Shown here in pieces: positions 36,928-62,914 of a stretch of DNA of 64,000 bases. The notes under the pieces are model-generated. The model was not told the DNA's origin. It saw nothing but the letters and a program-made list of their open reading frames with translations, and did no database searches. This stretch comes from Heterodontus francisci. Lineage: Eukaryota. The translations under genes were made by a program, and so were the position numbers. Numbering within the stretch: position 1 is the first letter of the stretch; each line of letters begins with the position of its first letter. Location: positions 682,001-746,000 of the forward strand of contig NW_027140825.1 of assembly GCF_036365525.1 (NCBI RefSeq). Direction: 5' to 3'.

Positions 36928-37070
36928 TTAATTGTGCTCCAAATGTCTAACGAAAGTTCAGCACCTGAGTCTCAACTGCCGTCACCAGGTGAAACCCTCG
37001 GGAGCCGTTTAAGCGGCGGGGACTTGTACGTTTTGCTTTCCTCTTTTTTGTATGAGTGTCTATCACTGTG

Positions 37071-37083
37071 GGGACAGCAGGGA
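37071..37083 (+). CDS. TRBD: TCR beta D segment D1 (GGGACAGCAGGGA)
   Basis: 5' 12-RSS: CTTTTTTGT 37043-37051, 12 bp, CACTGTG 37064-37070. 3' 23-RSS: CACGGTG 37084-37090, 23 bp, ACAAAAACC 37114-37122. Open in all 3 frames. Confidence 0.95.
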
Positions 37084-37608
37084 CACGGTGATAAAATCCA
37101 ATGCAACCTCCGTACAAAAACCTCACTCTGCACACCTGGTGGAGGATGAGCAGAAGAGCAGTGACAACAGAGTAAACGAGTCAACATGACCCTGGATTAT
37201 AACGGGAACTGGGCCCTTTTCATTATAAAGTTGTCTCAGAATGGTCCAGCTTTATAACCTAGAATGTTCCTCTGGAAAAGAGAATAACTGTGTGTCATTT
37301 GTGTGGAAACTGGTTACTCTTTAACCCTTAAACCCCACCCTGGTGTCCAGGGACCAATATTGATCCCTCAACCAACATCACAAAGAATAATCTGCTCATT
37401 AATCTCACTGCTGTTTGATGGGACTTCCTTGGTACAATATCAGTTGCTGCGTCTCCCTGTGGTGACCACTTCCTAAACAAACTGCTTCATTGGCTGTAAG
37501 CTGCTTTGTGTGTCCTGATTGTCTTGACCAGTGCTTCCTAAATGCTGAGCAGGTCACTTTTAGCAATCTGTTTCTGACCGGGTTGATGTAACGTGATCTG
37601 CTGACGTG

Positions 37609-37659
37609 CTACCAACACACCACTCAACTTCGGGACCGGTACCAAACTGACGGTGTTAG
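37609..37659 (+). CDS. TRBJ: J1.1 TNTPLNFGTGTKLTVL
   Basis: FGXG motif, GTAAG donor, 12-RSS GGTTGATGT / TGACGTG 37602-37608. Confidence 0.9.
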
Positions 37660-37901
37660 GTAAGATAATGGGGCGTTTTTTCCCCCACTCCCTTCATGTC
37701 CAGCTGTTTGCATTCCAAGCTTATTCCCCCCAACCCTCCGCGGGCGGTTTAAAAAGTCAGGCTGATGGCACTCGCCCTTCTTTCTGGTTTGCAAAGACCA
37801 GTCCAATATGACCCTGGCCTCTAAACCACCCCATCCTGTCTCGTTCAGTTACAAGGGGAACATCTCCCGGGTCTGTTCATGACTGAGTTTAGAGCATCGT
37901 G

Positions 37902-37949
37902 CAACAGACATAGCTGACTTCGGCGATGGGACCAAGTTGACAGTGTTGG
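37902..37949 (+). CDS. TRBJ: J1.2 TDIADFGDGTKLTVL
   Basis: FGXG, GTAAG donor, weak RSS (heptamer CATCGTG 37895-37901). Confidence 0.85.
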
Positions 37950-38612
37950 GTAAGGCGACTATGTATTTCTGTTCCTCCTATCCATCAGAATCTATGTTTA
38001 CATGCGGTTAAAAAATCACCAGGAGTAATGTTCAGATATTAGATACATAAAGGGGTTATATCATGAGGACTGGTTACTCAGACTAAGCTGACAGTCCCTC
38101 GAATATCGAACATTAAGGGCTGATATAATGGAGGGGTTTGAGGTGTTGGATAGATAGAGAGAGAAACTGCTTCCTCAGGTTGGTGAGGGTGGGGGTGGGG
38201 GGGGGGAAGGTTCCCAGAACAGTTTAAATTATCACCTTTCGGGGATGATATCAGGAAGCACTTCTTCACACAAAGGGTAGTGGAAATCAGGAACTCTCTC
38301 CCCCTCTTCATCTTCCCAAAACAATCTGTTGAGACTGGGGGTCAATTGTTAAATTCATATCCAAGATTGATAGAGCTGTGTAAAACAGAAGTATTGAGGG
38401 TTACAGAACAAAGACAGGATGATGGAGTGAAGATTCAGATCAACCCTGATCTAACTGAATGGTGGAACAGGCTCCAAGGGCTGAACGGCCACCTTCTGTC
38501 CCCATGTTTCTACGGCCTTCACCGGTCATTGACATGATATAAATTTCAATGGAACAGACTTAACAATCTAGAGGCATTGAGGGGGATTTTGTGACAGCCC
38601 CATACCAGTGTG

Positions 38613-38662
38613 CTCCTATAGCGAAGCATATTTCGGAGATGGGACCAAACTGGTGGTTTTAG
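38613..38662 (+). CDS. TRBJ: J1.3 SYSEAYFGDGTKLVVL
   Basis: FGXG, GTGAG donor, heptamer CAGTGTG 38606-38612, nonamer-like GGATTTTGT upstream. Confidence 0.92.
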
Positions 38663-40170
38663 GTGAGTGAATGCATTCCTAATACTGGAAAAGTTGATTC
38701 AATTTGGGAATTCACGTGAGGTGGTCGAGGGAGTGAAACCATAAGAATTTGGTGAATTTGTATCGTCTCTTCAGGTTACGAAGGGAGACCTGCAACTGTC
38801 GAATTCGTTTCACTGTAGGGAAGGGGTTTGAGTGGATACATAAGGGAGGGTCTCTAAAAGAAACAGAACGAACAGCAATGTAGATACAAATAGAATGATT
38901 GCGCTTGTGAGAGAAGAACAAGAGGACACAGGCATAGAACGAAAAATGTCAGATTGCATCGTTCAGTATGCAGTTCTGGTCTGCATATTATAAAATAAAT
39001 GATGTAGAGGCTCTGGATAAGGTAAATCAGAACAGATTAACAACTGTGCTGCCCAAACTGGGAAGTTGTAACTATTGGGGAATGTCGGACAGACTGGGGC
39101 TCCTTTCTCGAGAGCAGTGAAGTTTGAGGGGTGACCTGGTCGAGGTCTGCACGATTTTGAAAGCGGGTTCGATAGGGTAGACACACGGAAGTTTTTTCCA
39201 CTTGTGGGGAGACCAGAACGGGGGGATCATAAATGTCAGATAGTCAGTAATAAATTCAATGGGGAATTCAGGAGAAATTTCTTTACCCAGACAGTGGTGC
39301 GAATGTGGAACTCACTACCACAAGGAGTGGGTTTAAAAAAGTAGATTGGATAAAAAAAAATGGATTAAATGAAGGGGATGAGAGGAGTCTCAATGGAGTG
39401 CAAACACTGGAATGGAGCAGATGGGCTGAATGGCCTGTTTGTGTGTTGTAAATTCTATGTAATTCTATATATTCCCTCTTGGCCTCGAGCAGCAATGGAT
39501 GAAACCATTTTGAGACACACTATTTTCAAGTTACTAATCGAACTGGTGAGCTGTCCATATCCAGTGGACAATGAGGTGTCAAGGGCCTCATGACCTTTCC
39601 TCATTCACCAGGATAATACCGGTATTAAAAGAATTTAATTTCTGACGATGTGTTGTTTAAAGTAGGGTTGCAGTAAATTGAGAATTGGAGATTCAGGAGT
39701 GATCCAATTGATGTGTTTAAGATAATGATAGGATCTGATATTTCCTCTGGTGTGATGGGTCCAGAACAAGAGAGCAAAACCTTAAACTGATAGCTAGACC
39801 ATTCAGGAATGATGTCAAGAAGGACTTGTTTACAAAATGCCCCGTGGAATCCAGAAATCTCTCCCACAGAAAGCTGAGGGGGTCAATTGAAAATTTCAAA
39901 TGTGTGGTTGATTATTTTTTGATCGGCAAAGATGCTAAAGGTTATGGAACCAAGAAGGCAGGTCGAAGGCGTTAAGGTACAAATGATTAATAATCTAATT
40001 AAATGTCGGAATAAGCACGAAGGGCTGAATGGTCTACTCCTGTTCCCCAGTTGCTATGTTCCTTTGGACAAAAGTTCCTTATACTTGTCGGTTCTCCCTT
40101 ATTATGAGGGGCTCCTTTGGAAAAGGACTCAAAGACAGGTGATGTTTTAATACATGAGTTTATCATTGTG

Positions 40171-40220
40171 CTCTGGTGAGATTTATTATTTCGGAGCTGG
40201 GACGAAACTCACTGTTTTAG
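40171..40220 (+). CDS. TRBJ: J1.4 SGEIYYFGAGTKLTVL
   Basis: FGXG, GTAAG donor, CATTGTG 40164-40170, 12 bp, TGTTTTAAT. Confidence 0.92.
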
Positions 40221-40431
40221 GTAAGATTATGTTTGCACATGTAGATATTTATATATGTAAACATCTCTTTTCATCTGTAAGTCTTTCTATTTCTTTATCT
40301 ATCAATGTACCTATCTATTTGTTGGTCTGTGGATCCATCTGTCTGTCTGTTTGTCCATCTATCTATCTATTTGTCTGTCCATAGATCTGTCTACCCATCG
40401 TTGTATTTTGGTATTGTTGTTTAGTTCAGTG

Positions 40432-40488
40432 CGGGCGGGTATACCAACCTGCTACATTTTGGGGACGGGTCCACGTTGACGATTTTGG
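40432..40488 (+). CDS. TRBJ: J1.5 GGYTNLLHFGDGSTLTIL
   Basis: FGXG, GTGAG donor, degenerate RSS (TTCAGTG / TATTTTGGT); 5' boundary approximate. Confidence 0.8.
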
Positions 40489-40832
40489 GTGAGTTCAGTT
40501 TCTTTGTTTTCAATGAAGCAAGGGTCACCTGTAAACATCTTGCAAGAAGGATTGAATGAATAATTGGGAGGGACTTAGAGAAAATCTCCTATTGTCAGGA
40601 CTGCCACGGTGGATAACTGACTAAAAGGTCCACATTTAGACGGGGCAGGCAGTCTTGGGAATTCTGAGAGTTATAACTGCAAACTGCCTGGTTAGTCCAC
40701 GAGTTTACATTAACTTACAGTTAGCTTGCGTTAACCAGAGGTCACTATCAAATATTAAGGAATGGCCCAGTGAGTTTCTTTTCTTCCAGAAGAGAGTTGG
40801 GGAATGTTTTTGTGATGTGAGGTGATGATGTG

Positions 40833-40890
40833 GGAGCAGGGAGTATTCAACCTATGTATTTTGGAGATGGCACTAAATTAACTGTCCAGG
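40833..40890 (+). CDS. TRBJ: J1.6 GAGSIQPMYFGDGTKLTVQ
   Basis: FGXG, GTAAG donor, TGTTTTTGT 40805-40813, 12 bp, TGATGTG. Confidence 0.9.
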
Positions 40891-41630
40891 GTAAGTGAGA
40901 TGTTAGTCAAAATACGTCTCTTACTAGCATTGAAAACGTCGACTAGTTTACTCTCTTCAATTTAAAGAAAGGCGAGAGAATGTGAAAACAGGCAAAAGAG
41001 TAAGCATTGCATTGAAGAAGCAAGAATGTAAATAGCTAAATGTAGGAGATTGGAGGAGGGCTGGTGAGAGAGGAATTTGCAACCAGAGATCATGGCTGAT
41101 CTGATGTTGGCCTCGATCCCTCTTTCCTACCTGTTCTCCATAATCCTTGGCTCCGCTCTCTATCTCAGTTTGAATGCATTCACGGGCTCAGTCTCCACAG
41201 CGCTCTGGAGGAGGGAATTCCAAAGATTCACGACTCCCTGATGGAAGACATTCCTTCTCCACTCCGTCCTAAATGAGCGACCCCTCATTCTGAAACTGTG
41301 CCCTTTAATTCTACATGGGAACATTCTCTCAGCCTTTACCCTGTCAAGCGCCCTCAGAATCTTAGAATTTCCCAGAAGATCATCTCCCATTCTTCTTAAC
41401 TCCAGATGGAGAGCAAACATCAGACAAAACTGGAGGGAGATGGGAAATTAGATTTAAAACAGTGAAAAAGAGACAGAGACAAGGAGATCAATTGTAACAG
41501 AATATAAGATAAAGAGCAATAGGGTGGAATAATGAATATAACACAAGGCAAAATGTTCCAACTATGTTCATTAACTATTGTGTATCGAGTTGAAGAAACG
41601 CGAGTTCTGATACAAAAGTGTAACATTGCG

Positions 41631-41682
41631 TCAGGCAACGATGGTTATACTTTTGGGGGTAATTCAAAACTCATGGTTTTAG
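41631..41682 (+). pseudogene. TRBJ: J1.7 SGNDGYTFGGNSKLMVL (open but probably non-functional)
   Basis: FGGN instead of FGXG; heptamer CATTGCG has lost the essential GTG; donor intact; paralog of J2.7. Confidence 0.75.
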
Positions 41683-43901
41683 GTAAGTGAGATAGAATCG
41701 AATTAGCTCTTTAAAGGAAAGTGGAATCAGAGGGATGTCTAGTTGAAATTTAAAATTATTCAAACCTAGTTGTGGATCTGAGGACCTTATATAGAAACAT
41801 ACACCTTGTATTTGTGTTCAGACTCCATGCATTACTTCCGAGCCCCATATGGAATATTTCCTGAAACAAACTAGAGACGTATTGTGCATGTGGAAATCGA
41901 CATGTGATAAGTACCTTGGATATCAGAGGTTGAATGGCCTAATCCAGTCCCTAATGTAGCTAAATCGGCGTAATGCGAGTTGATGATAGGAGTGAGGTAC
42001 AGGGACAAATACGTGACAATCAAGAAATTTAGAATAAAGAGTTGAGGAAGCTGGAAAGTACCTTCGTTAAAGAAGGATTGACGAGGAGTTGAGCAAGGGA
42101 GTTAAGCTGAACCTCGATGAATCGCTGGTTAGGTCCCAGCTGGAGAATTGTGGGTGTCACATGTTAGGATGGATGTCAAGGCCTTAGAGTGGTTGCACGA
42201 ATGATTTATTCGACTGGTTCCAGCGATGAGGGTCTTCAGTTGCGTCTAGAGACTAGAGCAGAGAAAGTTAAGGGGGGATTTGACAGAGGTGTCCAAAGCA
42301 ATGAAGGCTTTGGACACAGTACATGCTCAGAAACAATTTCCAATGCTCGAAGCGTTGGTAAACAAAGGGCACAGAGTTAAGGTAATTGACAAAATAAACA
42401 GGGGTGATATGAAGAATAAAACAATTATGCGGTGTGTTGTTATCTGGAATGCGCTGCCTGAAAGGGTGGTGCAAACAGACTCAATACTAACTTTCAAAAG
42501 GGGGACTGGACAATTACTTGAAGGGGAAATTATTTCTACTGGTGGATGGGTCAATAAACAAAGGTCAGATATTTAAAATCATTGACAAAAGATCTACAAG
42601 GACAATTACTAGATTCCTTTTCACTCAGAGTTGTCAGAATTTGGGACACTCTAACTGAAGCAGAATGCTGACTCTATGTTTAAATAGAAGTTACAGGAAC
42701 ATAGGATCATCGGTACACAGGAGCAGGAGTAGTCCATTCGGCCCCTCGAGTCTGTTCTGCCAATCAATGCGATCATGACTGATCAGTGACCTAACTCTAT
42801 ATACCCCCATTGCCCCATAATCCCTTAATAGCTGTGGTTAACAACAATCTATCAATTTGAGATTTAAAATTGACAATTGTTCCAGCAGAAGAGAGTTCCA
42901 AACTTCTACCATCCTTTATGTGAAAAGATGTTTTCTAATTTCATGCCTGAAAAGTTCTGGCTCTAATTCTTAAACTCTGTCCCGGAGATCTAGACTGCAC
43001 AACCAATGGAGATCGTTTCTCTCCATCTACATCATGCATTCCCCTTAATATCTTGAAAACTTTGCTCAAACCACCCTTTAACCTTCTCTTTTCCAAAGAA
43101 TAGGAAATGTCGAATCTTTCCTTGCAATTTAACCCTTGGCGTCCAAGAATCAGTCTGTTTAATCTACACTACACTTCCCCCAAGACCAGCATATCCTTCC
43201 TAATGTCTGGTGCCCATAAATGCTCAGAGGAACTCCAGATGTGGTGTAACCAGGGCTTTGTATAGCTGAAACACGACTTCTACTTCATTCTACCTATTAA
43301 CTATTTTGCTTTACTCGTAACTGCTTTCTGAAATAGCCACGCAGTTGTCAAGGGCAACTAGGGATGGGTAACAAATGCTGGCCTTGTCAGTGACGCCCAC
43401 ATCCCATGAATGAGCTAAAAAAAATGGCCTCAACCTCCTCCAGCCCCATACAACCCTCCCTATCCCTGTAACCTCATCCAGCCCCCTACCACCCTCTCTA
43501 TGTCTGTAACCACCTCCAGCCCCCTACCACCCTCCCTATTTCTGTAACCTCCTCCAGCCTCTACAACACTCCCTATCTCTGTAACCTCCTCCAGCCTCTA
43601 CAACTCTCCGAGATCTTTGTGATCCTGAAATTCTGGACTGTCCGATTTTCATCGATCCACCATTGAGAGCTGTGCACGTAACCACTCAGCTCTGCACCTT
43701 TCTTTCCATCCACCTTGACGATACTAACATACATGTTCCTTTTGCATGTCGGAACCCACTGGAAGGGCTGAACAGTCTATTTTTGTTCCCGTGCTGCTGT
43801 CAGCCAATGTTCCTGTACTTGTATGTTCTCCATTGTTGTGAAAGGCTCTCTTGGGATAGAACCACAGAGAGGTGTGAGGTTTTATTCAGGGAGTTAGCTT
43901 T

Positions 43902-43946
43902 TGCTCTGCTGATATTAATACTTCGGAACTGGATCTAAGATTTAGG
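43902..43946 (+). pseudogene. TRBJ: J1.8 relic (J4-like)
   Basis: gatattaatacttcggaactggatctaag...tttag aligns to J2.4 with deletions; heptamer and donor destroyed; flanks homologous to ~49370-49640. Confidence 0.65.
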
Positions 43947-44104
43947 CAATATCCCATCTACATAAATGTGCAAATATCCATTGTTCGATCGATCCACAAT
44001 GTATCTGTGCATCCATCCATGTGTTTAGATATCGATACATTACTTGCTTGAGGCTGTACCTGTCTACCCAACGCTGTGTTTTGGTACTGTTGTTTAGTAT
44101 AGTG

Positions 44105-44161
44105 TAGGCGGGAACGCCCAGCCTCTACATTTTGGGGAAGGCTCGACTCTAACAGTTTTGG
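44105..44161 (+). CDS. TRBJ: J1.9 GGNAQPLHFGEGSTLTVL (J5-like)
   Basis: FGXG, TGTTTTGGT 44077-44085, 12 bp, TATAGTG; weak GTGTGT donor. Confidence 0.75.
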
Positions 44162-44682
44162 GTGTGTTAGATGTTTATTCGATTAAGCCAGGATGGCTGG
44201 GTTCCTATTGCCTGTGTCATGCAGATGTTCCGTCCATGGATCTCTGCTCCTTTACTCCAGCAGGAGAGATGAGAATGACAAGGGAAGAACGTAGGTAAGG
44301 CGGTTTCCCGTTACTTTAGTCAGACCAAGACGATAGCCGAACCCCTGCTGTTGACCTTGCTCTGAATCACACGTGAGCCATCTCGCTAACCGAACTAATC
44401 GGTCCCCATCCTGCATGCACAACTTACTTAATAATTATGACGAACTCCAAGTAAAATTGTCCAGTATTGTCAGAGCTGTATCTGTGGACATCTGACTAAC
44501 TGGTCCATACATTGATGCAGAGCCAGTATTGGGAATGTTTCCAGTGTTAATTGCCAACAACCCCGGTTAGTTTATGAGTTTACTTTGGCCAATGACACTC
44601 AAAGGCCAATATCAAATATTAATGATCGGGACAATGCAAATTAGCAGGACGCTATTGAGGAATGTTGTGACATGGTGATGTG

Positions 44683-44740
44683 GGAGCAGGAAGTAACCAT
44701 CCATCATATTTTGTAGATGCCACGAAGTTAACGTTCCTGG
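44683..44740 (+). pseudogene. TRBJ: J1.10 GAGSNHPSYFVDATKLTFL (J6-like)
   Basis: FVDA replaces FGDG; RSS nonamer removed by a small deletion relative to J2.6. Confidence 0.75.
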
Positions 44741-46367
44741 GTGAGTAGAATATTGGTCGAAATATATCAGTGGGCTCAATCAGCACTGAAACTGTTGGGC
44801 AGTTTGCTCCCTTCCGTTTGAAGAAAGGGGAGAGAACATGAAATTTGGAAAATTAAACAGTAAGCATTGCAGTAAAGCAGCAAAGGTTAAAACAATTAAA
44901 CATAGAGGAAAGGCGAGGTGGAGAGTGGAAGAAGGCTAGGGAGGCAACCATATACAGAGAGACACAGATTGGGAGCAAAATACAGACAAAAATGAACAGG
45001 AAAAGTCATTGTTAATTCGTGCTGGGATGCATTTATTGCCCACCCACAATTGACTTCTGAGTGGTTTGCTAGGCCATGATTTTATTTTTGTCATGGGATG
45101 TTTGCACCGCTGGAAAGGCCAGCATTTGTTGCCCATCCCTAATGGCCCTTGAACTGAGTGCTTTGCAATTTCAGAGGGCAGTTAACAGTCAACTGCATGC
45201 TGCAGGTTTGGAGTCCCATATAGGATGGTAGATGGGTTTTTACGACAATCAACGACAGTTTCATGGCACCCTGACAGATTTTTATAAATCGGTTCAATTT
45301 AAATCCCATCTGCGGCCATTTGAATTCACACAACCAGAACACTAGCCCGGGCTGCTGGATTACAGGCCCAGCAACATTATCATTTTGCTGGCGTCACGCC
45401 TGCGTTCAATGTGTTTTAGGTATTTCCACAGTGTTGTTAAGGAAGGAGTTCCTTTTTTGACCCATTTTCTCAGAGGGCGGATTATTCATTTTCAAACATT
45501 GCTCGAATCCCCCGAGAAATGTGTCATGAAGCCAGTGGTGATACTGAACACGAGCCTCCTCTCCCCACCCCCACTACACCATCTAAACTTCTATTCCTTT
45601 CTCCCTCATGTCAGGTGCATGGCGATGGGGGTTGGTGTGCAATGAGATCTGCAGGAATGATAACAGCACCGCACACATCAACACGACACCTGGGAAACTT
45701 GCACTAGTTTGGCAGATATGGGTCTCTCTGAGTGATAAGATAAGAGATAGCAGTGTGAACGATTTACTGTCTAGAGTAAGTGGCTTCTGTTTGAGGTCCC
45801 GTGGCCGGTATGTCCTGAGGTCCTGCACGTTGTAGAAGGTAGAATGTGGGTTATGAAGCGGGTAAGTGATGGGGGAAGGGGAAGGGGAGAAGGGGTGCAA
45901 CAGAGAGATGGAATGGAGAGAGAGAAAGCAAGAGAGAAAGCAAGCAAGAAAAAAAAGCATGAAAGGAAGGAAGGGAGGAAGGACGGAAGGACGGAAGGGA
46001 AGGAAGGAAGGAAGGAAGTAGAGGAAAGGAAGGAGGCTTGAGTGGATGAATGGGCCTGTTCCTGTGTAAGCAGCTCAAGAGGGGCTGAATGGGATTCCTC
46101 TTCTTCCTGTATAACAAGGTCTAGAGGGGCTGAATGGCCTCCTGCTGCACCTGTGTAGCAGGCTGACAAGGGGCGGAATGGCCACCTCCTGTTCCTGCTA
46201 ACAGTTTTGAGACGGAATGAACGGCCTTTAATTATGGTCCAAAGGACTAAAAAACTTTCAGCAGCTCAATCGAAACTGACTTCACCAAGTGAAGCCCTCG
46301 GGAGTCTTTGAAGAAGCAGGGCCTTGCAAAATTCGCGTTCTTTTTTGTATGAGTGTCTATCACCGTG

Positions 46368-46380
46368 GGGACAGGGGGGA
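46368..46380 (+). CDS. TRBD: TCR beta D segment D2 (GGGACAGGGGGGA)
   Basis: 5' 12-RSS: CTTTTTTGT 46340-46348, CACCGTG 46361-46367. 3' 23-RSS: CACTGTG 46381-46387, ACAAAAACC 46411-46419. Core nearly identical to the widely conserved Dbeta GGGACAGGGGGC. Confidence 0.96.
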
Positions 46381-46900
46381 CACTGTGATAGAATCCAATG
46401 CAGCCTCCGTACAAAAACCTCGCTCTACACACCTCGAGGAAGATCAGCAGAAGAGCAGTGGCAACAGAGTAAACGAATAAACATCTCCTCTGGATTATGG
46501 CGGGAGCTGGGCCCTTTCAATCTTGTAGATGCCTCAGAATGGTCCAGCTTTATAACCTAGAGCATTCCTCTGGAAAAGAGAATAACTGTGTTATTTGTGT
46601 GAAAACTGGTTACTCTTCTACCCCTGAAACACCACCCCGGTGTCTTGGGACCAATATTGATGCTCAACCAACATCACAATGATCTGCTCATTAATCTCAC
46701 TGCTGTTTGATGGGACTTCCTTGGTCCAATATCAGTTGCTCTGTCTCCCTGTGGTGACCACTTCCTAAACAAACTGCTTCATTGGCTGTAAGCTGCTTTG
46801 TGTGTCCTGATTGTCTTGACCAGTGCTTCCTAAATGCTGAGCAGGTCACTTTTAGCAAACTGTTTTCGACCGGGTTCGTGTAACATGATTTGCTGATGTG

Positions 46901-46951
46901 CGACAACAGCACCACTCAATTTCGGGACCGGCACCAAACTGACGGTGTTAG
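46901..46951 (+). CDS. TRBJ: J2.1 TTAPLNFGTGTKLTVL
   Basis: FGXG, GTAAG donor, GGTTCGTGT, 12 bp, TGATGTG. Confidence 0.9.
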
Positions 46952-47310
46952 GTAAGATAAAGGGGTCTTTTGTTCTCTCTACCTTCATGTCTAGCTGTGT
47001 GCATTCCAAGCTTACTGCCCCCCCCCCTCCTCCCCGGACAGTTTAACGAGTTAGGCAGCCGGTTAGATCTGTCTCATGACCGCCGAGAATTGCCCCTAAT
47101 TTCCCTCCTGCCACAAGCATCCGTTTGTCACTTTGGCGCGGTGTTTCTCTCCCCGGGACGACACTGGCCCTTCCTTCTGGTTCGCAAAGACCAGTCCAAC
47201 GGGACGCCCGCTTGGTGATGTGTTCCACGGTAAACCGCCCGGCACAGACCCGTTCAGCTGCAAGGGTAACAGTTCCCGGGCCAGTTCATGACTGGGTTTA
47301 GGCCACTGTG

Positions 47311-47358
47311 CAGGAAACATAGCTTACTTCGGCGACGGGACCAAGTTAACAGTTTTCG
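47311..47358 (+). CDS. TRBJ: J2.2 GNIAYFGDGTKLTVF
   Basis: FGXG, GTAAG donor, CACTGTG 47304-47310. Confidence 0.92.
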
Positions 47359-47938
47359 GTAAGGGACTCTGTTCTTCCTATCAGATCAACATCTAGGTTT
47401 ATATGCGGGGAGTAAGTTCAGATATTAGATGCAGAAAGGGGTTAAATCATGAGGACTTGGTTACTCAGACTAAGCTGACAGTCCCTTGAATCGAGATCAT
47501 TAAAGGGTCTGATATAATCGAGGTGCTTGAGGTGTTGGATCGATAGAGAGAAACTGCTTCTTCAGGTTGGGGGGAGTCCAGAACAATTTAAATTCGAGCC
47601 GTTCAGGGGTGATATCAGGAACTCTCCCCGCACCCCCCACAACAAAATAATATGCTGTTGAGGCTGGGCATCGATTGATAAGTTCAAATTCAAGATTGTT
47701 AGATTTTTGTTAAACAGAAGTATTGACAGTTACAGAACCAAGGTGGGATGATGGAGTTAAGATTCAGAACAACCCTGATCTAACTGCATGGTGGAAGAGG
47801 CTCGAAGGGCTGAACAGCCACCTCCTGTCCCCCTGTTCCAACACCCTTTACGGGCCATTGAAACAGTCAGAACTTCAATGGAATAGACTTAACAATCTAG
47901 ACTAGAGGGGGATTTTGCGACAGCCCCATACCATTGTG

Positions 47939-47988
47939 TAATGCTAGAGAAGCATATTTCGGAGATGGGACCAAACTGGTGGTTTTAG
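47939..47988 (+). CDS. TRBJ: J2.3 NAREAYFGDGTKLVVL
   Basis: FGXG, GTGAG donor, CATTGTG 47932-47938. Confidence 0.92.
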
Positions 47989-49529
47989 GTGAGTGAATGC
48001 ATTCCTAATGCTGGAAAAGTTAATTCAATTTGGGAATTCACGTGGGGTGGTCCAGGGAGTGAAAATATGGGAATTTGGTGAATTGATTTCGACTCTTGAG
48101 CTGCCAAAGGGAGACCTACAACTGCTGAATTCACGTCACTGGATGGAAAGGGGTTTGAGTGGGGACATAAGGTAGGGTCTCTAAAATAAACAGTGTAAAC
48201 AGCAATTGCAGCTGCAAATGAGAACAGAACAAGAGGACACAGGCACAGAACGAAAACTGTCAGATTCAATTCTTCAGTATGCCGTTATGGACTGCATATG
48301 ATTAAAAAAGCAGAGGCTCTGGATAGAGCAAAACAAAACATATTTACAAGTGAGCTCCCAAAACTGAGAGAATATAACCACAGGAAAGAATGAAGAGGCT
48401 GGTGCTGTTTTCTCTAGAAAAGAGAAGGCTGAAGGGAATAACCTGATCGAGGTATTTAAAATTATGACAGAGGCAAGATGATTCTACTTGTTGGGGAGAC
48501 CAGAACCAGGGGACCATCAATATAAGACAGTTACTAATAAATCCAATATGGAATTCAGGAGAAGCCTTTTCAACCAGAGAGTGGCGAGAATGTGGACCTC
48601 GCTACCACAGGGAGTGGGCTGAGGCGAATAGCAGAGATGTATTTAAGAGGGAAGCTGGATAAACATATGGGGGAGAAAGGAATAAAAGGACCTATTGATG
48701 GGGTGAGATGAAGAGGGTGTGAGAAGGATAATGTGTAGCATTTAATCGGCTAGGATGTAGTGGGCTGAATGGCCTGGTTCGGTGCTGAAGTGTCGATATG
48801 ATTTGATGTATTCCCCATTAACCTGAAGCGTTTAAATGGATGAGAAATATCAAAAGGGATTTTTTAAATTTGTGAATGGAGACTGGGTGTAGAATGCACA
48901 TTGAACGGCCTGGGAAACGTGAGCTGAAAGTCCAGGGCAGATTGCGAATGATCTTTCCTCATTTACCAGAATCATGCCGGAATTAAATTGTGGGGGCAGG
49001 TTGCTTAGAGATGTTGAGCATTGGAGATTAAGGATTGATCCAACTGATGTGTTTAAGATAATGAGAGGATTCGATAGGGCAGATAGAGCTGCAATTTACG
49101 CGGGTGTCAGAGCCCAGAACAAGGGTGAGGGTGGAGGGGAGCATTAGCTTAACATTAAAGCTTGGCCGTTCAGGGGTGATGCCAGAAAGGACATAACTGA
49201 ACAAACGGTGGTGGAAATCTGGGCCTCTCTCCCCTATGAAACTGCTGAGGCCACAGGGTCAATTGTCACTTCCCAATCTGAGAATAATAGAGCCTTGTTA
49301 GGAAAAGGGTTTGGAACACAAACAGGCTGATGGGGTTACAATACAGATGAGTCATGACCTCACTGAATGTCAGAACAAGCTCGATGGGCTGAATGGCCTA
49401 CTCCAGCGACAGCATTTCTATGTTCCTTTGTGCCAATACTCCTGGAGGTTCTTTCTAGTTGTGAAAGGCTCCTTCAGGACATGAATCAGAGAGAGGTGAG
49501 AGGTTTTGATGCAGGGATTTAGCTCTGTG

Positions 49530-50883: not shown

Positions 50884-51239
50884 GTAACTGATTAACGTGG
50901 CGTCAGTCAGAATCATTCCGCACGGTCTGATATGGTATAGTCTGATTGAAATTTACAAGATTAATATATGAAGATAACGCTAATCATATTTCCTATTCAG
51001 GTGCCACCTGTTTCTTAACAATGACCGATTGTGTGTGTGGAAATCAACAAGTGATAGCTGTCTGGGAAATCAGACTCTGAATGACCTCCCCCTGTCCCTA
51101 ATGTTACTCCAGCGGTTTAATGCGAGGAGTGAGTTAGAGAGAGAGCTAGGTCAAAAAAAGGGTTAATATGTTTGAAATGACCAGTTGATGATGCTGGAAC
51201 AGACCATCATTGGTGAAGGATTCACAAGGAGTTCCGTAA

Positions 51240-51790
51240 GGAAGTGAGGATTAACATTTACAAATCACTGGTTAGGTCCCAGCTGGAGCATTGTGTGCAG
51301 TTCTGGGTACCACACTTTATGAAGGCCTTAGATAGGGAGCAGAAATGATTCACCAGAATGGTACCAGAGATGAGGGGCCTCAGATAGTTGTAGAGACTGG
51401 AGAACCTGGAATTATTCTGCTTTCAACAGAGAAGGTTAAAGGGAGATTGAAAAGAGGTGTTCAAATTAATGAAGGTTTTGGATAGAGTTAATAATCAGAA
51501 ACAGTCTCCATTGGTAGAAGGGTCGGTAACCAGAGGACACAGGTTTTGAGGCAATTGACAAAAAGGACCAGAGGCGGGATGAAGAGACATTCTCCCACAA
51601 AGGTAGTTACTGTGATCGGGAAGGCACATCTGAACTGGTGGTGGAAGTTGGTTCAGTCGTGACTTTCAAAATGGAAATTGATAGATACTCGAAGGGAAAT
51701 ATCCAGGACTATGTTAAAACCCTTTCATGAAGTCAGCAGAGGTCCTATGGGCCGAATGGTCTCCCCTTCAGTAATGTATATTTCTGATTC
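51240..51790 (+). mobile_element. CR1-like LINE fragment
   Basis: YKSLVRSQLEHCVQFW-type sequence; a related copy lies at ~42050-42540. Confidence 0.75.
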
Positions 51791-51945: not shown

Positions 51946-51995
51946 TTCTGGCAATCAATATTACTTCGGAAGCGTTACCAAGTTAGTAGTGGCAG
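51946..51995 (+). CDS. TRBJ: J2.8 SGNQYYFGSVTKLVVA (non-canonical FGSV, open)
   Basis: AGTTTTGTT, 12 bp, CATTGTG; GTGAG donor. Confidence 0.8.
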
Positions 51996-52297: not shown

Positions 52298-52350
52298 TTC
52301 TGGAAGCTACGAGTATTTCTTCGGTGACGGGACAAAACTGACTGTGTTGG
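52298..52350 (+). CDS. TRBJ: J2.9 SGSYEYFFGDGTKLTVL
   Basis: FGXG, CACTGTG 52291-52297, GTGAG donor. Confidence 0.93.
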
Positions 52351-53407: not shown

Positions 53408-53460
53408 TACAGGAAATACTCTGTATTACTTCGGTGACGGGACAAAATTGATTGTTTTAG
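53408..53460 (+). CDS. TRBJ: J2.10 TGNTLYYFGDGTKLIVL
   Basis: FGXG, CATTGTG 53401-53407, GTGAG donor. Confidence 0.92.
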
Positions 53461-53968: not shown

Positions 53969-54021
53969 CTCAAATAACTACGATTATACTTTTGGCGATG
54001 GGACCAAGTTAGTAGTTTTCG
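53969..54021 (+). CDS. TRBJ: J2.11 SNNYDYTFGDGTKLVVF
   Basis: FGXG, AGTTTTAAC, 12 bp, CACTGTG; GTAGG donor. Confidence 0.93.
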
Positions 54022-54691: not shown

Positions 54692-54747
54692 TTATGGAAA
54701 GACCGAACCATTATATTTTGGCCAAGGGACCAAGCTCACAGTTTTGG
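54692..54747 (+). CDS. TRBJ: J2.12 YGKTEPLYFGQGTKLTVL
   Basis: FGXG, AGTTTTGTA, 12 bp, CACTGTG; GTATG donor. Confidence 0.93.
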
Positions 54748-56445: not shown

Positions 56446-56482
56446 GGCCCTGGTAGTTTTACAACTGGCCTGTGACATTGTG

Positions 56483-56531
56483 TTCAGCTGGGACCTCGAT
56501 CTCTTACTTTGGCTCTGGGATTACGTTCTAG
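56483..56531 (+). pseudogene. TRBJ: J2.13 SAGTSISYFGSGITF* (deletion after FGSG, in-frame TAG)
   Basis: Good RSS (AGTTTTACA, 12 bp, CATTGTG) but shortened 3' end gives TAG at 56529-56531. Confidence 0.82.
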
Positions 56532-57088
56532 GTAGGTAAACAAGAATAGATCTCAATATTCAAATTTTATTCGCTCTAAGTGTTCATTCATTGCTTCGTA
56601 ATTCTGCCAAAACTCACAAACCTGGCCACATACTGGAAAACTTGAGTAAATTTGTATCCCAAGATGCACAATTTTTCAAAGACAACGTTACCAGACTTCT
56701 CTGTGTCTACCCTCTGGAACCCCCCAACCCTTTCATAATCTTAGACGCCTCTTTCAGGTCACCTCTAAGCCTTCTCTTATCTATCATAATGGCTATTCAG
56801 TCTTTCCTGATAGGTAAATATGTATGAAGACGAGAACTGTGCACAGTGATCCAAGTGTGGTCTAACCGAGGGATATGGAGACCAGAACTGTGCACAGAGC
56901 TCCAAGAACGTCTAAGCAAATTTTACCATAATTTCTCTGCTTTAAAATGGAATGGTGGAGAAAAGGACAGACAAATCTACACATTGCTATTGGTTGAATT
57001 ATAATTGTTCAAAGGTGTCAGAGCATTCGATGAAGTATCGTGTAATCATTGGTCCCCAGCAGTTTTAATACTGCTTTGTAACACTGTG

Positions 57089-57144
57089 TTCTGGAAACAG
57101 CACACCTCTCCGCTTTGGCGATGGGACAAGATTAACAGTTCTGG
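57089..57144 (+). CDS. TRBJ: J2.14 SGNSTPLRFGDGTRLTVL
   Basis: FGXG, AGTTTTAAT, 12 bp, CACTGTG; GTATG donor. Confidence 0.93.
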
Positions 57145-57750: not shown

Positions 57751-57802
57751 GATGTAACTACTAACTTTCATTTTGGCCCCGGTTCCAAATTAACAGTGTT
57801 GG
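57751..57802 (+). CDS. TRBJ: J2.15 DVTTNFHFGPGSKLTVL
   Basis: FGXG, AGTTTTCTG, 12 bp, CATTGTG; GTAAG donor. Confidence 0.92.
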
Positions 57803-58819: not shown

Positions 58820-58870
58820 CTTCAGGATATGAACAGTATTCTGGAGGGGGCACGAAGCTAAGCGTTTCGG
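58820..58870 (+). CDS. TRBJ: J2.16 SGYEQYSGGGTKLSVS (Phe to Ser, open)
   Basis: AGTTTTCGT, 12 bp, CATGGTG; GTGAG donor; SGGG in place of FGXG. Confidence 0.8.
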
Positions 58871-60429
58871 GTGAGTAGCTGACAGTACAAGAGGTCTCAG
58901 TTAATGATGGATGGACCAAGGTCTGCTGTTGTTATACGGATGCAGTTCTCTAATTGTGGGGAGGGATTTTAGCAGATGAACACGAGGATTCATTTCACGT
59001 GTAGGGGACATTTACGCGGGATTCGTGCATAGTTCTGTCAGTGAGGCGGTGGCTCCTTATTTCTGTAACTTCCTCTGGACCTAAAAGAAACCATGATGAT
59101 TTCTCTGTGCTCCTCCAATTCTGGCCTCTTGTGCATCCTCCCCTCCCTCGAACCCACCATTGGCGGCTGTGCCTTCAGCTGCCTGAGCCCTAAACCCTGG
59201 AATTCCCTCCTTAAACACCTCTGCTTCTCTCCCTCTCTCCTTCTTTAAGAAGCATCTTAGAACCTACTTCTTTGACAGGTCACCTGTCCCTAATATCTAC
59301 TTCGATAACTCGGTATCAAGTTGCTGTCTGAGTTGCTCTGATGGCGTGATTTTTCACTGCATCAACGGTGCTAGTTAAATGCAATTTTTTTGTTGTTATT
59401 AATCACCAGGTAGGCCTCGCCTTGAGTATTGTGACCAATTCGTGGCTAACACACTTTAGGAAGGATGTCAAGGCCATAGAGAGGGTGCAGAAGATGTTTA
59501 CTAGAATGGTACCAGACATGGGGAGGTTTCACTTGTGTTTAGAAATGGGAGAAGCTGGGATTGTTCTCCTTAGAGCAGAGAAGGCGAAGGGGAGATCAAT
59601 GTTGTTTCAGTAAACTTATTCTTAAAATAAAGACACATTCGCAAGTAACCAGGAAAAGCAGACAAAATATAAAGGGAAAATTAATTGAAGACAAACAACA
59701 GCGTGGCGAATCCCAGAGGGAGGAAGTCCCAATAAAAGTACAATTGTTAAGACCAAAATTAAACTTGTGTTCAGCCCCTTTGGAAACAGGTAGATTTTGG
59801 ACAGCAACGTGCGCAAGGCATTTTCTTGTATTGCAGCAAAGGTACCAAACTAACTAGTTCTAGGTAAAGACGCACCATTGTCAAACTGCATCTGTCAATT
59901 GCAGCTCAACTGGTTGAGAAAGAGACCAGTTCTCAAAATGCTGCTTGGGTTTAAGTATTTCAGTGAAGTTACACAATGGTAACACTCTTACCTCCGAGTC
60001 AAAAGAAAAAGCGAATTCCACATTGTCACTATTCTCTGGGTGAAGAGACGTCTCCTGAAATCTCCAATGGTTCAATATTCAGAACAGAAATATAACAAGA
60101 TTAGGCATCAGTCATTGTGTTAATGATTTTATCATTTTAATATTCATGGAATTCTCACAGAGTCTTGACTGTAAACCCAAACCTGTTCAGGTATTTCTTT
60201 CGCAATATTACGCTCATAGAGCTTGAGAGTTGAAGAACTGACTGTGGAGTGTAGTCACTGTTGTAATGTAGGGAAAGATTTCAGCCAAAATGCGCACAGC
60301 AAGATCCCACAAGCATCATTGCACTAAATGACCAGATAACCGGAAATGGTGGATGTGAAGTGTTGAATGAGGGATAAATATTGGCTCGGACACACTCCCC
60401 TTATTTTCTTTGAGCCAATACATTGTTTC

Positions 60430-61180: not shown

Positions 61181-61249
61181 ATGTGTGAGTTTACGGTAGC
61201 ACTAATTATTAAATATTACATTTGGGGGAAGAGACAAGAGTAGGATTAG

Positions 61250-61830
61250 AATCATAATACAGCACAGAGGGGGGCCATTCAGCCCATCGAGTCCATGCCA
61301 GCTCTCTGTCTGGCAATCCAATCAGTCCCACTCCCTCGCTCTATCCCTGTGGCCCTGCAAGTTAATTTGCCTCAAGTGTCCATCCAATTTCCTTCTGAAA
61401 TCATTCATTGTCTCTGCTTCCACCACCCTTGTAGGCAGCGAGTTCCAGGTCATTACCACACGTGGCTTAAAAGTGTCCCTCCTCACATCCCCCTGCATCT
61501 TTTGCACAGCACCAGAAATCCGTCTCTTCTGGTCCTTGTACCAACAACTAATAGGTGACGCATTTCTTTGTCTACCTTATCCAAATCCGTCATAGTCTTG
61601 GACACTTCTATCAAATCTCCCCTCAATCTCCTTTGCTCCAAGCAGAACAATCCCAGCTTCTCCAACCTAACCTTGTAGCTAAAATCCTTCATCCCTGGAA
61701 CCATTCTGTTAAATATCCTCTGTACCCTCTCAAGGACACTCACAACCTTCCTCAAATGTGGTAATCAGAAGTGGCTGCAAAACTCTAGTTGTTTCCGAAC
61801 CAGAGCTTTAGAAATGTTCCCCATAACTTC
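61250..61830 (-). mobile_element. CR1-like LINE fragment
   Basis: LERVQRIFNRMVPGM...LGLFCLEQRRLRGDLIE. Confidence 0.85.
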
Positions 61831-62077
61831 CCTGATAGGAAAGGGCTCTAGATAATGGGACATGGTGAGTGATAGCCTGGTTATTGAGAACAGGCTGGCC
61901 CAGAGTTCAGGGTAACACTTTTCAGATAGACAGGAGAAACTCTTTCATAATGAGACAGACTTGTACTTCACTCAATGACGAAGAGGTTCAGATGATCAGT
62001 TTCTGCCACTTTGGGTTAAAATGTACAAAAGCAGGTCGAGGTTGCAAACTGATTCTACGTTTTATGACTGATCGGTG

Positions 62078-62130
62078 TTTGGGAAACAGAGAGGTTTATT
62101 CTGGAGTTGGCACAAAATTAACTGCTCTGG
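62078..62130 (+). pseudogene. J-like relic GNREVYSGVGTKLTAL, no GT donor, 93 nt upstream of C exon 1
   Basis: GXGTKLT motif; resembles J2.16 (tattctggag..ggcac.aa..ta); preceded by ATCGGTG; CT where the GT donor should be. Confidence 0.6.
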
Positions 62131-62223
62131 CTAGAATTGAAAGGTTGATATTGTTTGGTGGTTTAAAATTCTCAAGACGGGTTTCATACTCATCCATATT
62201 GTCTTCATTTACTTTTCCTGCAG

Positions 62224-62574
62224 GCGAAAACGATACGATTAGGCCTGCCAAAGTTACTGTCTTTGAGCCCTCTCCCGAAGAGATTAGAGAAAAGAAAAAA
62301 GCCACTGTGGTCTGCCTCGTCAGCGACTTCTACCCCGACAACATCAAGATCCACTGGCTTGTCGATGGCAAGGAGAAAGATGCCAATGACACGAACATTC
62401 ACACTGATCTCAATGCCATCCTATCAAAAGAAAATACATCTTACAGCATTAGCAGCCGGCTGAGATTCGACGCCCTAGATTGGGCTCGGTCCAAGAACGT
62501 TGAGTGCAGAGTAGATCTCTACACTAACGAATCAGTGCCGACAACAAGCAGTTCAACATTAGCTGTCAAAGCAG
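62224..62574 (+). CDS. TRBC: TCR beta constant region exon 1 (Ig C1-set domain)
   Basis: Polypyrimidine/CAG acceptor ending 62223; PAKVTVFEPSPEEIREKKKATVVCLVSDFYPDNIKIHW...YSISSRLR...W...ECRV, typical of Cbeta; phase-1 GTAGG donor. Confidence 0.97.
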
Positions 62575-62893
62575 GTAGGCACACTAGTGAGACCAATACC
62601 ATTTTATTTCAGCTTCAAAGAAATCAAAAGTTGCATTTATATAGCACCTGTGCTCTTATGAAAGTACGAATAAGCAAGTAGATGTATCAGTAAGTCAATA
62701 AATAAATAAATAATTCATGAAATAGAACAATATTGTCGTGTAAAGGGGAAGATATGGTTAAACACTCAATTAAAATGACTCTCAATATATTAGACTACAG
62801 TGCGGGACTCAATTGTGATAATCTACATTTACACAGTAATTTCATAAAATATTCTGATGCTGAATGTTTATTGATTTCTCTTTCTTTTCCCAG

Positions 62894-62914
62894 AAATGTG
62901 CGGTATAAGTAAAG
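62894..62914 (+). CDS. TRBC: TCR beta constant exon 2 (hinge, EMCGISK, interchain Cys)
   Basis: Strong pyrimidine tract + CAG; 21-nt phase-1 exon with CG motif like the short mammalian Cbeta hinge exon; GTGAA donor. Confidence 0.85.

What the first reader, a model, noticed from the sequence alone, without database searches (positions are those of the whole stretch)
37043..62914. Two D-J clusters feeding a single constant gene (D1-J10-D2-J16-C)
Seen: two complete 12/23-flanked D segments, each followed by a J series, with no C exon or C remnant between 41700 and 46340. Established: mammalian TRB duplications are of whole D-J-C cassettes. Inference: both clusters splice to one Cbeta; D1 can join J segments of either cluster and D2 only downstream ones; a failed D1-J1 join could be replaced by V to D2-J2 without changing C. 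I cannot tell whether this layout is already published for this species.
Basis: partly seen in the sequence, partly recalled or inferred. Interest (0 to 1): 0.8.

Follow-up and report, generated by a model that had tools for sequence, protein, structure and literature searches.

The report
Shark TCR-beta: two D-J clusters, one C
In the horn shark T-cell receptor beta locus an old copy of the D-plus-J block sits in front of a second D-J block with no constant gene between them, and J segments of the first block are spliced across the second block onto the one constant gene, a modest but real variation on the usual vertebrate layout.

Summary
The window carries V segments, then D1 (37043-37122), 10 J-like segments, D2 (46340-46419), 16 J-like segments plus 2 J remnants, and one C-beta gene (exon 1 at 62224-62574), all on the + strand.

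No C exon lies elsewhere in the window. tblastn, a four-sequence C-beta HMM on six-frame pieces, nhmmer, and Pfam on 9 ORFs of the inter-cluster stretch were all blank.

The two D-J blocks are 73% identical overall, so they are old paralogues, not haplotypes. At least two duplication layers are visible.

Contigs from four runs of one sample show J1.1, J1.2 and J1.3 followed, exactly at their splice donors, by the first 20-24 letters of C exon 1. The contigs carry non-germline sequence upstream of J. Cluster 1 is therefore rearranged, transcribed and spliced over cluster 2.

Not shown:
- D1-to-J2 or D1-D2 joins, and second-chance rearrangement.
- That no identical C is missing from the assembly.
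- What lies beyond base 64000.

My paper searches found no shark TRB D-J-C map. A skink locus with 3 D, 6 J and 1 C is the closest published case. This scan already noted the same layout on another piece of this genome (s1-874195).

Verdict: a new variant of a known kind, of moderate interest.

The parts
37043..37122 (+). D1: 5' nonamer, 12-letter spacer, heptamer (37064-37070), 13-letter core (37071-37083), heptamer (37084-37090), 23-letter spacer, nonamer (37114-37122)
37609..37659 (+). J1.1 (FGTGTKLTVL, donor gtaag); seen spliced to C exon 1
   Evidence: loose end at 37660 in X1 and X2 record 9
37902..37949 (+). J1.2 (FGDGTKLTVL); seen spliced to C exon 1 in 2 contigs
   Evidence: loose end at 37950
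38613..38662 (+). J1.3 (FGDGTKLVVL); spliced to C exon 1. Its last 40 letters are identical to J2.3; one contig covers 2 discriminating letters
   Evidence: loose end at 38663 and X3 record 22
40171..40220 (+). J1.4 (FGAGTKLTVL), intact by sequence; not seen spliced
   Evidence: depth 0 in bin 40200-40399
40432..40488 (+). J1.5 (FGDGSTLTIL), intact by sequence
40833..40890 (+). J1.6 (FGDGTKLTVQ), intact by sequence
41631..41682 (+). J1.7: FGGNS instead of FGxG, heptamer CATTGCG; probably unusable
43906..43945 (+). J1.8: pseudogene (FGTGSKI then a stop, no heptamer, no donor); closest to J2.4
44105..44161 (+). J1.9 (FGEGSTLTVL, donor gtgtg); closest to J2.5 (86%)
44683..44740 (+). J1.10: FVDA instead of FGxG, open frame but non-canonical; closest to J2.6 (83%)
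46340..46419 (+). D2: same build as D1, core 46368-46380
46901..46951 (+). J2.1 (FGTGTKLTVL)
47311..47358 (+). J2.2 (FGDGTKLTVF)
47939..47988 (+). J2.3 (FGDGTKLVVL)
49530..49579 (+). J2.4 (FGAGTKLTVL)
49735..49791 (+). J2.5 (FGERSALIVL, non-canonical)
50342..50399 (+). J2.6 (FGDGTKLTIL)
50832..50883 (+). J2.7 (FGDGTNLVVL)
51946..51995 (+). J2.8 (FGSVTKLVVA, non-canonical)
52298..52350 (+). J2.9 (FGDGTKLTVL)
53408..53460 (+). J2.10 (FGDGTKLIVL)
53969..54021 (+). J2.11 (FGDGTKLVVF)
54692..54747 (+). J2.12 (FGQGTKLTVL)
56483..56535 (+). J2.13: pseudogene (FGSGITF then a stop)
57089..57144 (+). J2.14 (FGDGTRLTVL)
57751..57802 (+). J2.15 (FGPGSKLTVL)
58820..58870 (+). J2.16 (SGGGTKLSVS, F replaced by S; non-canonical)
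59812..59863 (+). J remnant (no FGxG)
62078..62128 (+). J remnant without a donor, about 100 bases 5' of C exon 1
62224..62574 (+). C-beta exon 1 (C1-set Ig domain), acceptor cag|G at 62224
   Evidence: (runs hold 42-67% of its sampled words)
62894..62914 (+). C-beta exon 2 (short hinge, reads EMCGISK with the split codon); membrane exon not in the window
   Evidence: by eye, compared with P0001-P0003 printed
36114..42394 (+). Duplicated block A (D1, J1.1-J1.7), collinear with 45612-51563
43835..44991 (+). Third copy of the J4-J6 block (J1.8-J1.10), closer to 49458-50639 than to 39990-41030
45612..51563 (+). Duplicated block A' (D2, J2.1-J2.7)

Best explanation
This is the working 3' part of a horn shark TCR-beta (TRB) locus. 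Its order is V segments, D1, ten J-like segments, D2, sixteen J-like segments, then one C-beta gene, all in one orientation.

An old tandem duplication copied the D segment and its first J segments without a constant gene. An older duplication of a J4-J7 block lies underneath it.

Shown: cluster-1 J segments are used. After V(D)J joining to J1.1, J1.2 or J1.3, the primary transcript runs through the rest of cluster 1 and all of cluster 2 (an intron of about 24.6 kb for J1.1). The J donor is then spliced to C exon 1 at 62224.

Inferred from the 12/23 rule and deletional joining:
- D1 can join any J of either cluster.
- D2 can join only J2.x.
- D1's 23-signal can also join D2's 12-signal, giving a V-D-D-J chain.
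- An allele with a failed V-D1-J1 join still has D2-J2 for a second attempt, and ends with the same constant region.
For: Anatomy:
- Two D elements with 12/23 signals, against 0.00 expected by chance.
- 23 J pattern matches on one strand, against 0.01 expected, plus 3 seen by paralogy.
- 8 V segments with 23-signals on the + strand upstream; the 3 V exons scanned hit V-set.
- C exon 1 is a C1-set domain (2.4e-19). It is 56-62% identical to the three shark C-beta proteins found, one of them named TCR beta chain-like by NCBI. Many solved TCR beta chains are among its matches.

No second C: searches are all blank outside 62224-62574.

Old paralogy, not haplotypes:
- 3748 of 5107 aligned columns are identical (73%), with 1146 gap columns.
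- Collinear blastn blocks run at 64-84% identity.

Use of cluster 1:
- In X1, loose ends lie directly behind 37660 (1 contig), 37950 (2 contigs) and 38663 (2 contigs). They read the letters of window 62225-62248.
- X2 record 9 (201 letters) lies on 37613-37660 only, with 2 other letters. The paralogue J2.1 would give 6.
- X3 record 22 lies on 38618-38663 with 0 other letters. J2.3 would give 2.
- J1.2 differs from J2.2 at 8 of 49 places, so a 95% threshold separates them.
- These contigs continue 69-198 letters beyond the J on the 5' side without fitting the germline flank. That is what a V(D)J junction gives.

I did not check it.
Against: - The runs are only guessed to be RNA, and all four come from one sample. 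The exact donor-to-exon junctions are my reason to call them cDNA.
- The junction evidence is 20-24 letters of C exon 1. A second C with the same start, missing from the assembly or beyond base 64000, would look the same.
- Only 3 of 7 intact-looking cluster-1 J segments were seen spliced. Bin 40200-40399 has depth 0 in all runs, so J1.4 was not seen. 153 loose ends were not printed.
- X1 also has unspliced contigs over 39.5-42.8 kb with 0-5% other letters. The sample therefore holds a diverged allele or paralogous copy, and some transcripts may come from that copy.
- No read was laid on 43000-46400, so the cluster 1 to cluster 2 joint of the assembly is not checked by reads.
- Use of cluster 2 and of D2 was not tested.
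- The membrane exon of C is outside the window.
Confidence: 0.8

Rival explanations
1. Assembly error: a C-beta gene, or a whole D-J-C cassette end, really lies between the clusters and was lost by a collapse. The true layout would then be the ordinary D-J-C, D-J-C.
For: In mammals the two C genes have nearly identical first exons (recalled). The 24 letters seen behind J1.x would therefore not tell two such genes apart. No reads were laid on 43000-46400. Repeats and a third J4-J6 copy lie there, which is the kind of sequence where collapses happen.
Against: The sequence from 36657 to 64000 has no N. Both flanks of the joint are collinear with their paralogues. No trace of any C exon was found by four kinds of search.
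Confidence: 0.07
2. Cluster 1 is a decaying relic. It is still occasionally rearranged but contributes little, and the locus works in effect as one D-J-C unit (D2, J2.x, C).
For: 3 of 10 cluster-1 J segments are defective. Only J1.1-J1.3 were seen spliced. This genome holds several dead D-J or D-J-C relics according to earlier notes.
Against: D1 keeps both signals; 27 of 28 and 36 of 39 letters are identical to D2's signals. J1.1-J1.6 and J1.9 keep the FGxG motif, a GTG heptamer end and a donor. The D to J1 interval is the best conserved part of the block, at 91-93%. Spliced J1.1-J1.3 contigs occur in X1-X3, which are runs of one sample.
Confidence: 0.08
3. The spliced J1-type contigs come from a paralogous TRB copy elsewhere in the genome whose layout differs. 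They would then say nothing about this locus.
For: Most laid contigs are 95-99% alike rather than 99% or more (56 versus 253 in X1). Unspliced contigs carry up to 5% other letters. Earlier notes list TRB pieces on other scaffolds.
Against: X3 record 22 fits J1.3 with 0 other letters, and X1 record 8 fits 42591-42836 with 0. The only other D-J/D-J piece noted is said to have the same layout.
Confidence: 0.05

Closest known systems
Tetrapod TRB loci with tandem D-J-C cassettes (2 in human and mouse, 3 in sheep and pig, 5 in axolotl, 6 in the newt Pleurodeles waltl)
   Same: V segments lie upstream. Each D has a 5' 12-signal and a 3' 23-signal. J segments have 12-signals and FGxG. There are two D-J clusters in tandem, so a second rearrangement attempt on one allele is possible. 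Passages read in PMC10464911, PMC12529555 and PMC12698447.
   Different: There every D-J cluster has its own C. Here no C lies between the clusters, and J1.x is spliced over cluster 2 to the single downstream C.
Skink (Tiliqua rugosa) TRB: three TRBD, six TRBJ, a single TRBC (PMC11754216)
   Same: More than one D serves one constant gene, and the conserved G-rich D core is present. The paper quotes GGGACAGGGGGC. D2 here reads GGGACAGGGGGGA.
   Different: The passages I read do not say whether the skink D and J segments are interleaved; the figure and supplements are not held. The shark has 26 J-like segments in two paralogous blocks.
Zebrafish, catfish and duck TRB: one D followed by (J)n-C1-(J)n-C2 (PMC5278385; abstract of PMC8656973)
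   Same: It departs from the D-J-C cassette rule through a partial duplication of the D-J-C region (listing).
   Different: It is the mirror case. There the J-C part was duplicated without D. Here the D-J part was duplicated without C.
TCR delta and IgH translocon D-J regions (several D segments, several J segments, one C) - recalled, not from a call
   Same: Several D segments feed one constant region, and D-D joining is possible under the 12/23 rule.
   Different: There the D segments lie together upstream of all the J segments. Here D2 lies downstream of ten J segments.

Membership tests
TCR beta (TRB) locus, D-J-C region | D segment flanked by a 5' 12-spacer signal and a 3' 23-spacer signal, with the conserved G-rich core | tested here: met
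   Two such elements, against 0.00 expected. The cores read GGGACAGCAGGGA and GGGACAGGGGGGA. The conserved TRBD core quoted in PMC11754216 is GGGACAGGGGGC.
TCR beta (TRB) locus, D-J-C region | J segments with a 12-spacer signal, the FGxG motif and a splice donor | tested here: met
   23 pattern matches against 0.01 expected. Many heptamers keep only the GTG end and many nonamers are weak.
TCR beta (TRB) locus, D-J-C region | Constant exon is a C1-set domain most like TCR beta constant regions | tested here: met
   Pfam C1-set at 2.4e-19. It is 56-62% identical to three shark C-beta proteins. Solved TCR beta chains make up most of the 60 rows shown, although the five best rows are Ig or UrIg chains.
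TCR beta (TRB) locus, D-J-C region | V segments with 23-spacer signals upstream, in the same orientation | tested here: met
   8 V ends with CACAGTG-23-nonamer on the + strand. V-set Pfam hits for the 3 V exons scanned, of 8.
TCR beta (TRB) locus, D-J-C region | Rearranged transcripts with J spliced to C | tested here: met
   Loose ends behind the J1.1, J1.2 and J1.3 donors read the start of C exon 1. The contigs do not fit the germline flank 5' of J. All runs are from one sample, and the runs are RNA only by guess.
Tandem D-J-C cassette organisation (mammal and urodele type) | Each D-J cluster is followed by its own C gene | tested here: not met
   No C exon between J1.10 and D2 or anywhere else in the window except at 62224.
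Single-D, two-C organisation (zebrafish, duck type) | One D, and two J-C units | tested here: not met
   Two D segments and one C in the window. What lies beyond base 64000 was not seen.
Multi-D, single-C TRB (skink type) | Several D segments and one C | tested here: met
   Two D segments and one C within the window. Whether the skink D segments are interleaved with its J segments cannot be read from the held text.

The most novel reading that the evidence does not exclude
Elasmobranch TRB gained the 'second chance' architecture by duplicating only the recombining part (D, its conserved D-to-J1 control stretch, and J segments) and never the constant gene. If so, the benefit of two D-J clusters lies in rearrangement opportunity, not in C diversity.

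Because no C lies between them, D1-D2 joins would give ordinary transcripts. V-D1-D2-J2 chains with long CDR3 would then be a regular part of the shark beta repertoire.

The 600-base D-to-J1 stretch, kept at 86-93% identity in both copies, would be a duplicated germline promoter or recombination-centre element.
Probability: 0.3. Interest if true: 0.55.

Novelty: new variant of a known kind. Interest (0 to 1): 0.4.

Why it matters
Textbook TRB loci expand by copying whole D-J-C cassettes, so the gain from a second D-J cluster cannot be separated from the gain from a second constant gene. Here the two are uncoupled in a cartilaginous fish, and both clusters end in one C. This offers a natural test of whether secondary V-to-DJ rearrangement alone is the selected benefit.

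It also predicts repertoire signatures that are easy to test:
- The D1 core with J1.x only.
- Both D cores with J2.x.
- D1-D2 tandem joins.

It also gives a germline D and J reference for horn shark TRB repertoire work.

Tried and rejected
Uncollapsed haplotype: rejected. The blocks are 73% identical with many indels, and blastn blocks run at 64-84%.

Hidden C remnant: I looked with the window's own exon, three shark C-beta proteins including their membrane parts, a four-sequence profile on six-frame pieces and nhmmer, and Pfam on 9 ORFs. Nothing was found.

Published horn shark cDNAs: I hoped to read J-C junctions from them, but the word search gave only 3 proteins among 10 candidates, none from Heterodontus. 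Longer chains fall outside that tool's length window, so this blank says little.

Joints (38269-38304 to 39878-40019, and others): I read these as contigs of a dispersed repeat family laid on two copies. They have short sides of 20-23 letters, foreign letters between the sides and very high depths. I do not read them as splicing.

The 44986-45503 to 52499-52993 match is a dispersed repeat with partial copies elsewhere in the window, so I did not use it as evidence of paralogy.

Literature: nine searches gave no paper describing a shark TRB D-J-C region or a D-J/D-J-C layout.
- I read passages of PMC5931798, PMC11754216, PMC6795676, PMC5278385, PMC10464911, PMC12529555, PMC12227049 and PMC12698447.
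- For PMC8656973, PMC2806336, PMC10513440 and PMC11971796 I saw only listings and abstract starts.
- Hawke et al. 1996 (horned shark TCRB cDNAs, about 18 J; recalled) and Rast and Litman 1994 are not held.
- Supplements are closed. Supplementary Table 6 and Figure 1A of the skink paper may show the order of its D and J segments.

The spliced J-C model was not joined. I searched C exon 1 alone.

Full report
WHAT IS THERE. The window has one N run, 36425-36656. Upstream of it lie eight V segments on the + strand, each ending in CACAGTG, a 23-letter spacer and a nonamer. Their exons translate to typical V-beta-like domains, and the 3 of 8 that I scanned hit Pfam V-set.

About 390 bases 3' of the N run lies D1 at 37043-37122: nonamer, 12-letter spacer, heptamer, a 13-letter G-rich core, heptamer, 23-letter spacer, then a perfect ACAAAAACC nonamer. 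D2 at 46340-46419 has the same build. A 78-letter pattern of this build matches only these two places, with 0.00 expected in 100 shuffles. A looser regex on both strands finds no third D.

A degenerate J pattern (FGxG through the donor, up to 3 mismatches) gives 23 matches against 0.01 expected. All are on the + strand between 37629 and 58875. Three further J-like elements show up by paralogy (43922, 49761, 56508). Two remnants lie at 59812-59863 and 62078-62128.

By sequence, 7 of the 10 cluster-1 J segments look usable:
- Usable: J1.1-J1.6 and J1.9.
- J1.7 reads FGGNS with a CATTGCG heptamer.
- J1.8 has a stop and no donor.
- J1.10 reads FVDA.

In cluster 2, 12 are canonical, 3 are open but non-canonical, and 1 has a stop. 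Many J signals keep only the GTG end of the heptamer and have weak nonamers.

THE CONSTANT GENE. Exon 1 runs from 62224 to 62574 (acceptor cag|G) and exon 2 from 62894 to 62914.
- Exon 1 is a C1-set domain (Pfam 2.4e-19).
- It is 56-62% identical to the only three proteins the word search returned. Two are from Scyliorhinus torazame. One is from Mustelus asterias and is named 'T cell receptor beta chain ... like' by NCBI.
- Solved TCR beta chains dominate its matches in the structure bank, although the five best rows are Ig or UrIg chains, as expected for a C1-set domain.
- The membrane exon of the shark relatives finds nothing in the window, so it lies beyond 64000.

I searched exon 1 alone and did not build or search a joined J-C or exon1-exon2 model.

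NO C BETWEEN THE CLUSTERS.
- tblastn of exon 1 against the whole window returns only itself; the next hit has E 1.4 and lies elsewhere.
- tblastn of the three shark proteins returns only 62238-62573, plus J hits from the J part of P0002.
- A profile of four C-beta exon-1 sequences, run against 2754 six-frame pieces, returns the real exon at 6e-63 and then 0.34 at 20307. None of the 20 best rows printed lies in 41700-46340.
- nhmmer with the exon DNA returns itself only at E below 1.
- None of the 9 ORFs of 70 aa or more that overlap 41700-46340 has an Ig-domain hit.

NATURE OF THE DUPLICATION. Self-blastn shows 36114-42394 collinear with 45612-51563 at 64-84% identity, and 43835-44991 matching 49458-50639 at 72%. 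A global alignment of 36657-42400 with 45955-51570 has 3748 of 5107 aligned columns identical (73%) and 1146 gap columns. This rules out two haplotypes of one cluster.

Identity is uneven along the block:
- 86-93% from D to J1 (37057-37656).
- 78-87% up to 39056.
- 56-73% beyond.

The three copies of the J4-J6 block are not equidistant. Over the 835 columns ungapped in all three, 49440-50640 and 43740-44995 are 78.6% identical, while 39990-41030 is 68% identical to each of them. The best matches of single J segments agree: J1.1/2.1, J1.2/2.2, J1.3/2.3, J1.8/2.4, J1.9/2.5 and J1.10/2.6.

My reading (inference) is that there are two layers. The older one is a duplication of a J4-J7 block. The younger one is a tandem duplication that carried the D, J1-J3 and a J4-J6 block, followed by loss of one block from the second copy. 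Gene conversion of the D-J3 part is an alternative that I cannot exclude.

The N run sits where copy 2 has a GA-rich low-complexity stretch (45920-46055). I did not fill it or look it up.

IS CLUSTER 1 USED? Four runs (X1-X4) from one sample and one study hold 42-67% of the sampled words of C exon 1. All are kept as Logan contigs, and X1-X4 are marked RNA only by a guess. With runs of 116-160 million letters, such a share fits expressed RNA better than shotgun DNA (inference).

I laid X1-X4 on 37000-42999. In X1, loose ends lie directly behind 37660 (1 contig), 37950 (2 contigs) and 38663 (2 contigs). Each place is one base past the last coding base of J1.1, J1.2 and J1.3. The loose ends read 20-24 letters identical to window 62225-62248, that is C exon 1 from its second base; the first base is the shared G.

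Pieces listed in table 8:
- X2 record 9, 201 letters, lies only on 37613-37660 with 2 other letters.
- X2 record 15, 186 letters, lies on 38623-38663.
- X3 record 22, 313 letters, lies on 38618-38663 with 0 other letters.

These contigs run on for tens to nearly 200 letters 5' of the J without fitting the germline flank. The J1.1 piece starts 4 bases inside the coding end. Both are what a trimmed V(D)J junction looks like (inference).

Discrimination from the paralogues:
- J2.1 laid in place of J1.1 would give 6 mismatches in 48.
- J2.2 differs from J1.2 at 8 of 49 places.
- J2.3 is identical to J1.3 over its last 40 letters, but would give 2 mismatches in record 22.

Use of J1.2 is therefore firm, use of J1.1 is good, and use of J1.3 is likely.

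Against, or not shown:
- No spliced contig was seen for J1.4-J1.7, and bin 40200-40399 has depth 0 in all runs.
- 153 loose ends were not printed.
- X1 also holds unspliced contigs over 39554-42836 with 0 to 5% other letters. These could be intron RNA of transcripts running from a joined J1.x to C, or germline transcripts, or DNA, and partly come from a diverged allele or copy.

HOW IT MOST LIKELY WORKS.
- Shown: the order of the parts, the absence of a C between the clusters in this assembly, and the splicing of J1.1-J1.3 to an exon that begins like the one at 62224.
- Inferred from the 12/23 rule and deletional joining (established for TRB): D1 can join J segments of both clusters, and D2 only J2.x.
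- Inferred: D1 can join D2. Such D1-D2 joins are reported in mammals (PMC10513440, abstract start only).
- Inferred: after a non-productive V-D1-J1.x join, an upstream V can still join a D2-J2.x join, which deletes the first attempt.
- Unlike in mammals, the chain ends in the same C whichever cluster is used.
- 'D2 only downstream' need not be absolute. A paper reports rare D2-J1 joins in mammals (PMC11971796, title and abstract start only).

COMPARISON WITH WHAT IS KNOWN.
- Passages I read state that tetrapod TRB loci expand by D-J-C units: one in Xenopus, two in human and mouse, three in sheep and pig, five in axolotl, six in the newt (PMC12529555, PMC12698447, PMC10464911).
- Duck, zebrafish and catfish have one D and two C genes (PMC5278385; abstract of PMC8656973).
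- The skink Tiliqua rugosa has three D, six J and one C (PMC11754216). It is the closest published case I found. The held text does not give the order of its D and J segments, and figures and supplements are not available here.
- Nine searches found no paper on a shark TRB D-J-C region.
- The classic horned shark cDNA papers are not held. From memory they reported about 18 J-beta, which would fit use of both clusters, but I could not check this.

EARLIER NOTES OF THIS SCAN.
- The species name (horn shark) comes from note s1-872524, not from my own test.
- Note s1-874195 reports the same 'D-J/D-J without C' layout on another piece of this genome. Its follow-up also found no paper for it. It is a lead, not independent support, because that piece may be the other haplotype.
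- Notes s1-872523, s1-872816 and s1-873855 place a second, very divergent and broken C-beta cassette tail-to-tail with the working C. If the same holds here it would lie beyond base 64000. I did not test it.

VERDICT. The key inference, that cluster-1 J segments are spliced to the single downstream C, is supported by junction contigs from one sample. The recombination consequences remain inference. This is a new variant of a known kind of locus, of moderate interest, and the scan had already seen the same layout on other DNA of the same genome.

Noticed in passing
37257-37656 and 46555-46948: The stretch between D and the first J is the best conserved part of the duplicated block (91-93% identity against about 72% for non-feature columns). 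By eye it holds TGTGGT next to CTTCC motifs, which I recall as RUNX-like and ETS-like sites. It is a candidate germline promoter or control element kept in both copies; recent gene conversion is the alternative.
   Followed up: partly
39990-41030, 43740-44995, 49440-50640: There are three copies of a J4-J6 block with unequal distances: 78.6% between the second and third listed, and 68% from the first to each of them. The locus therefore grew in at least two duplication layers.
   Followed up: yes
36425-36656: This is the only N run of the window, 232 letters long and about 390 bases 5' of D1. The matching place in copy 2 (45920-46055) is a GA-rich low-complexity stretch. I did not fill it or look it up.
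   Followed up: no
39554-42836: Run X1 holds eight unspliced contigs that tile this J-region 'intron', with 0 to 5% other letters. They could be pre-mRNA or germline transcription through cluster 1, or DNA, and partly come from a diverged allele or copy.
   Followed up: no
54837-55235: A 132-aa open frame lies between J2.12 and J2.13. It ends in a Cys/His-rich tail and has no Pfam hit. By eye it looks like the 3' end of a retroelement ORF.
   Followed up: partly
62078-62128: A J-like remnant without FGxG or a donor lies only about 100 bases 5' of C exon 1. A second remnant is at 59812-59863.
   Followed up: partly
145-27627: The eight V segments come in four neighbouring pairs with near-identical ends (V ends at 297/2483, 6182/8462, 11928/16537 and 24724/27627). 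This points to recent tandem V duplications. The V ending at 2483 has only a short open frame.
   Followed up: partly
38246-38305 and 39878-40019: Many high-depth contigs join these places with foreign letters in between (tables 5 and 5c). I read this as a dispersed repeat family expressed or present in many copies, not as splicing of this locus.
   Followed up: no
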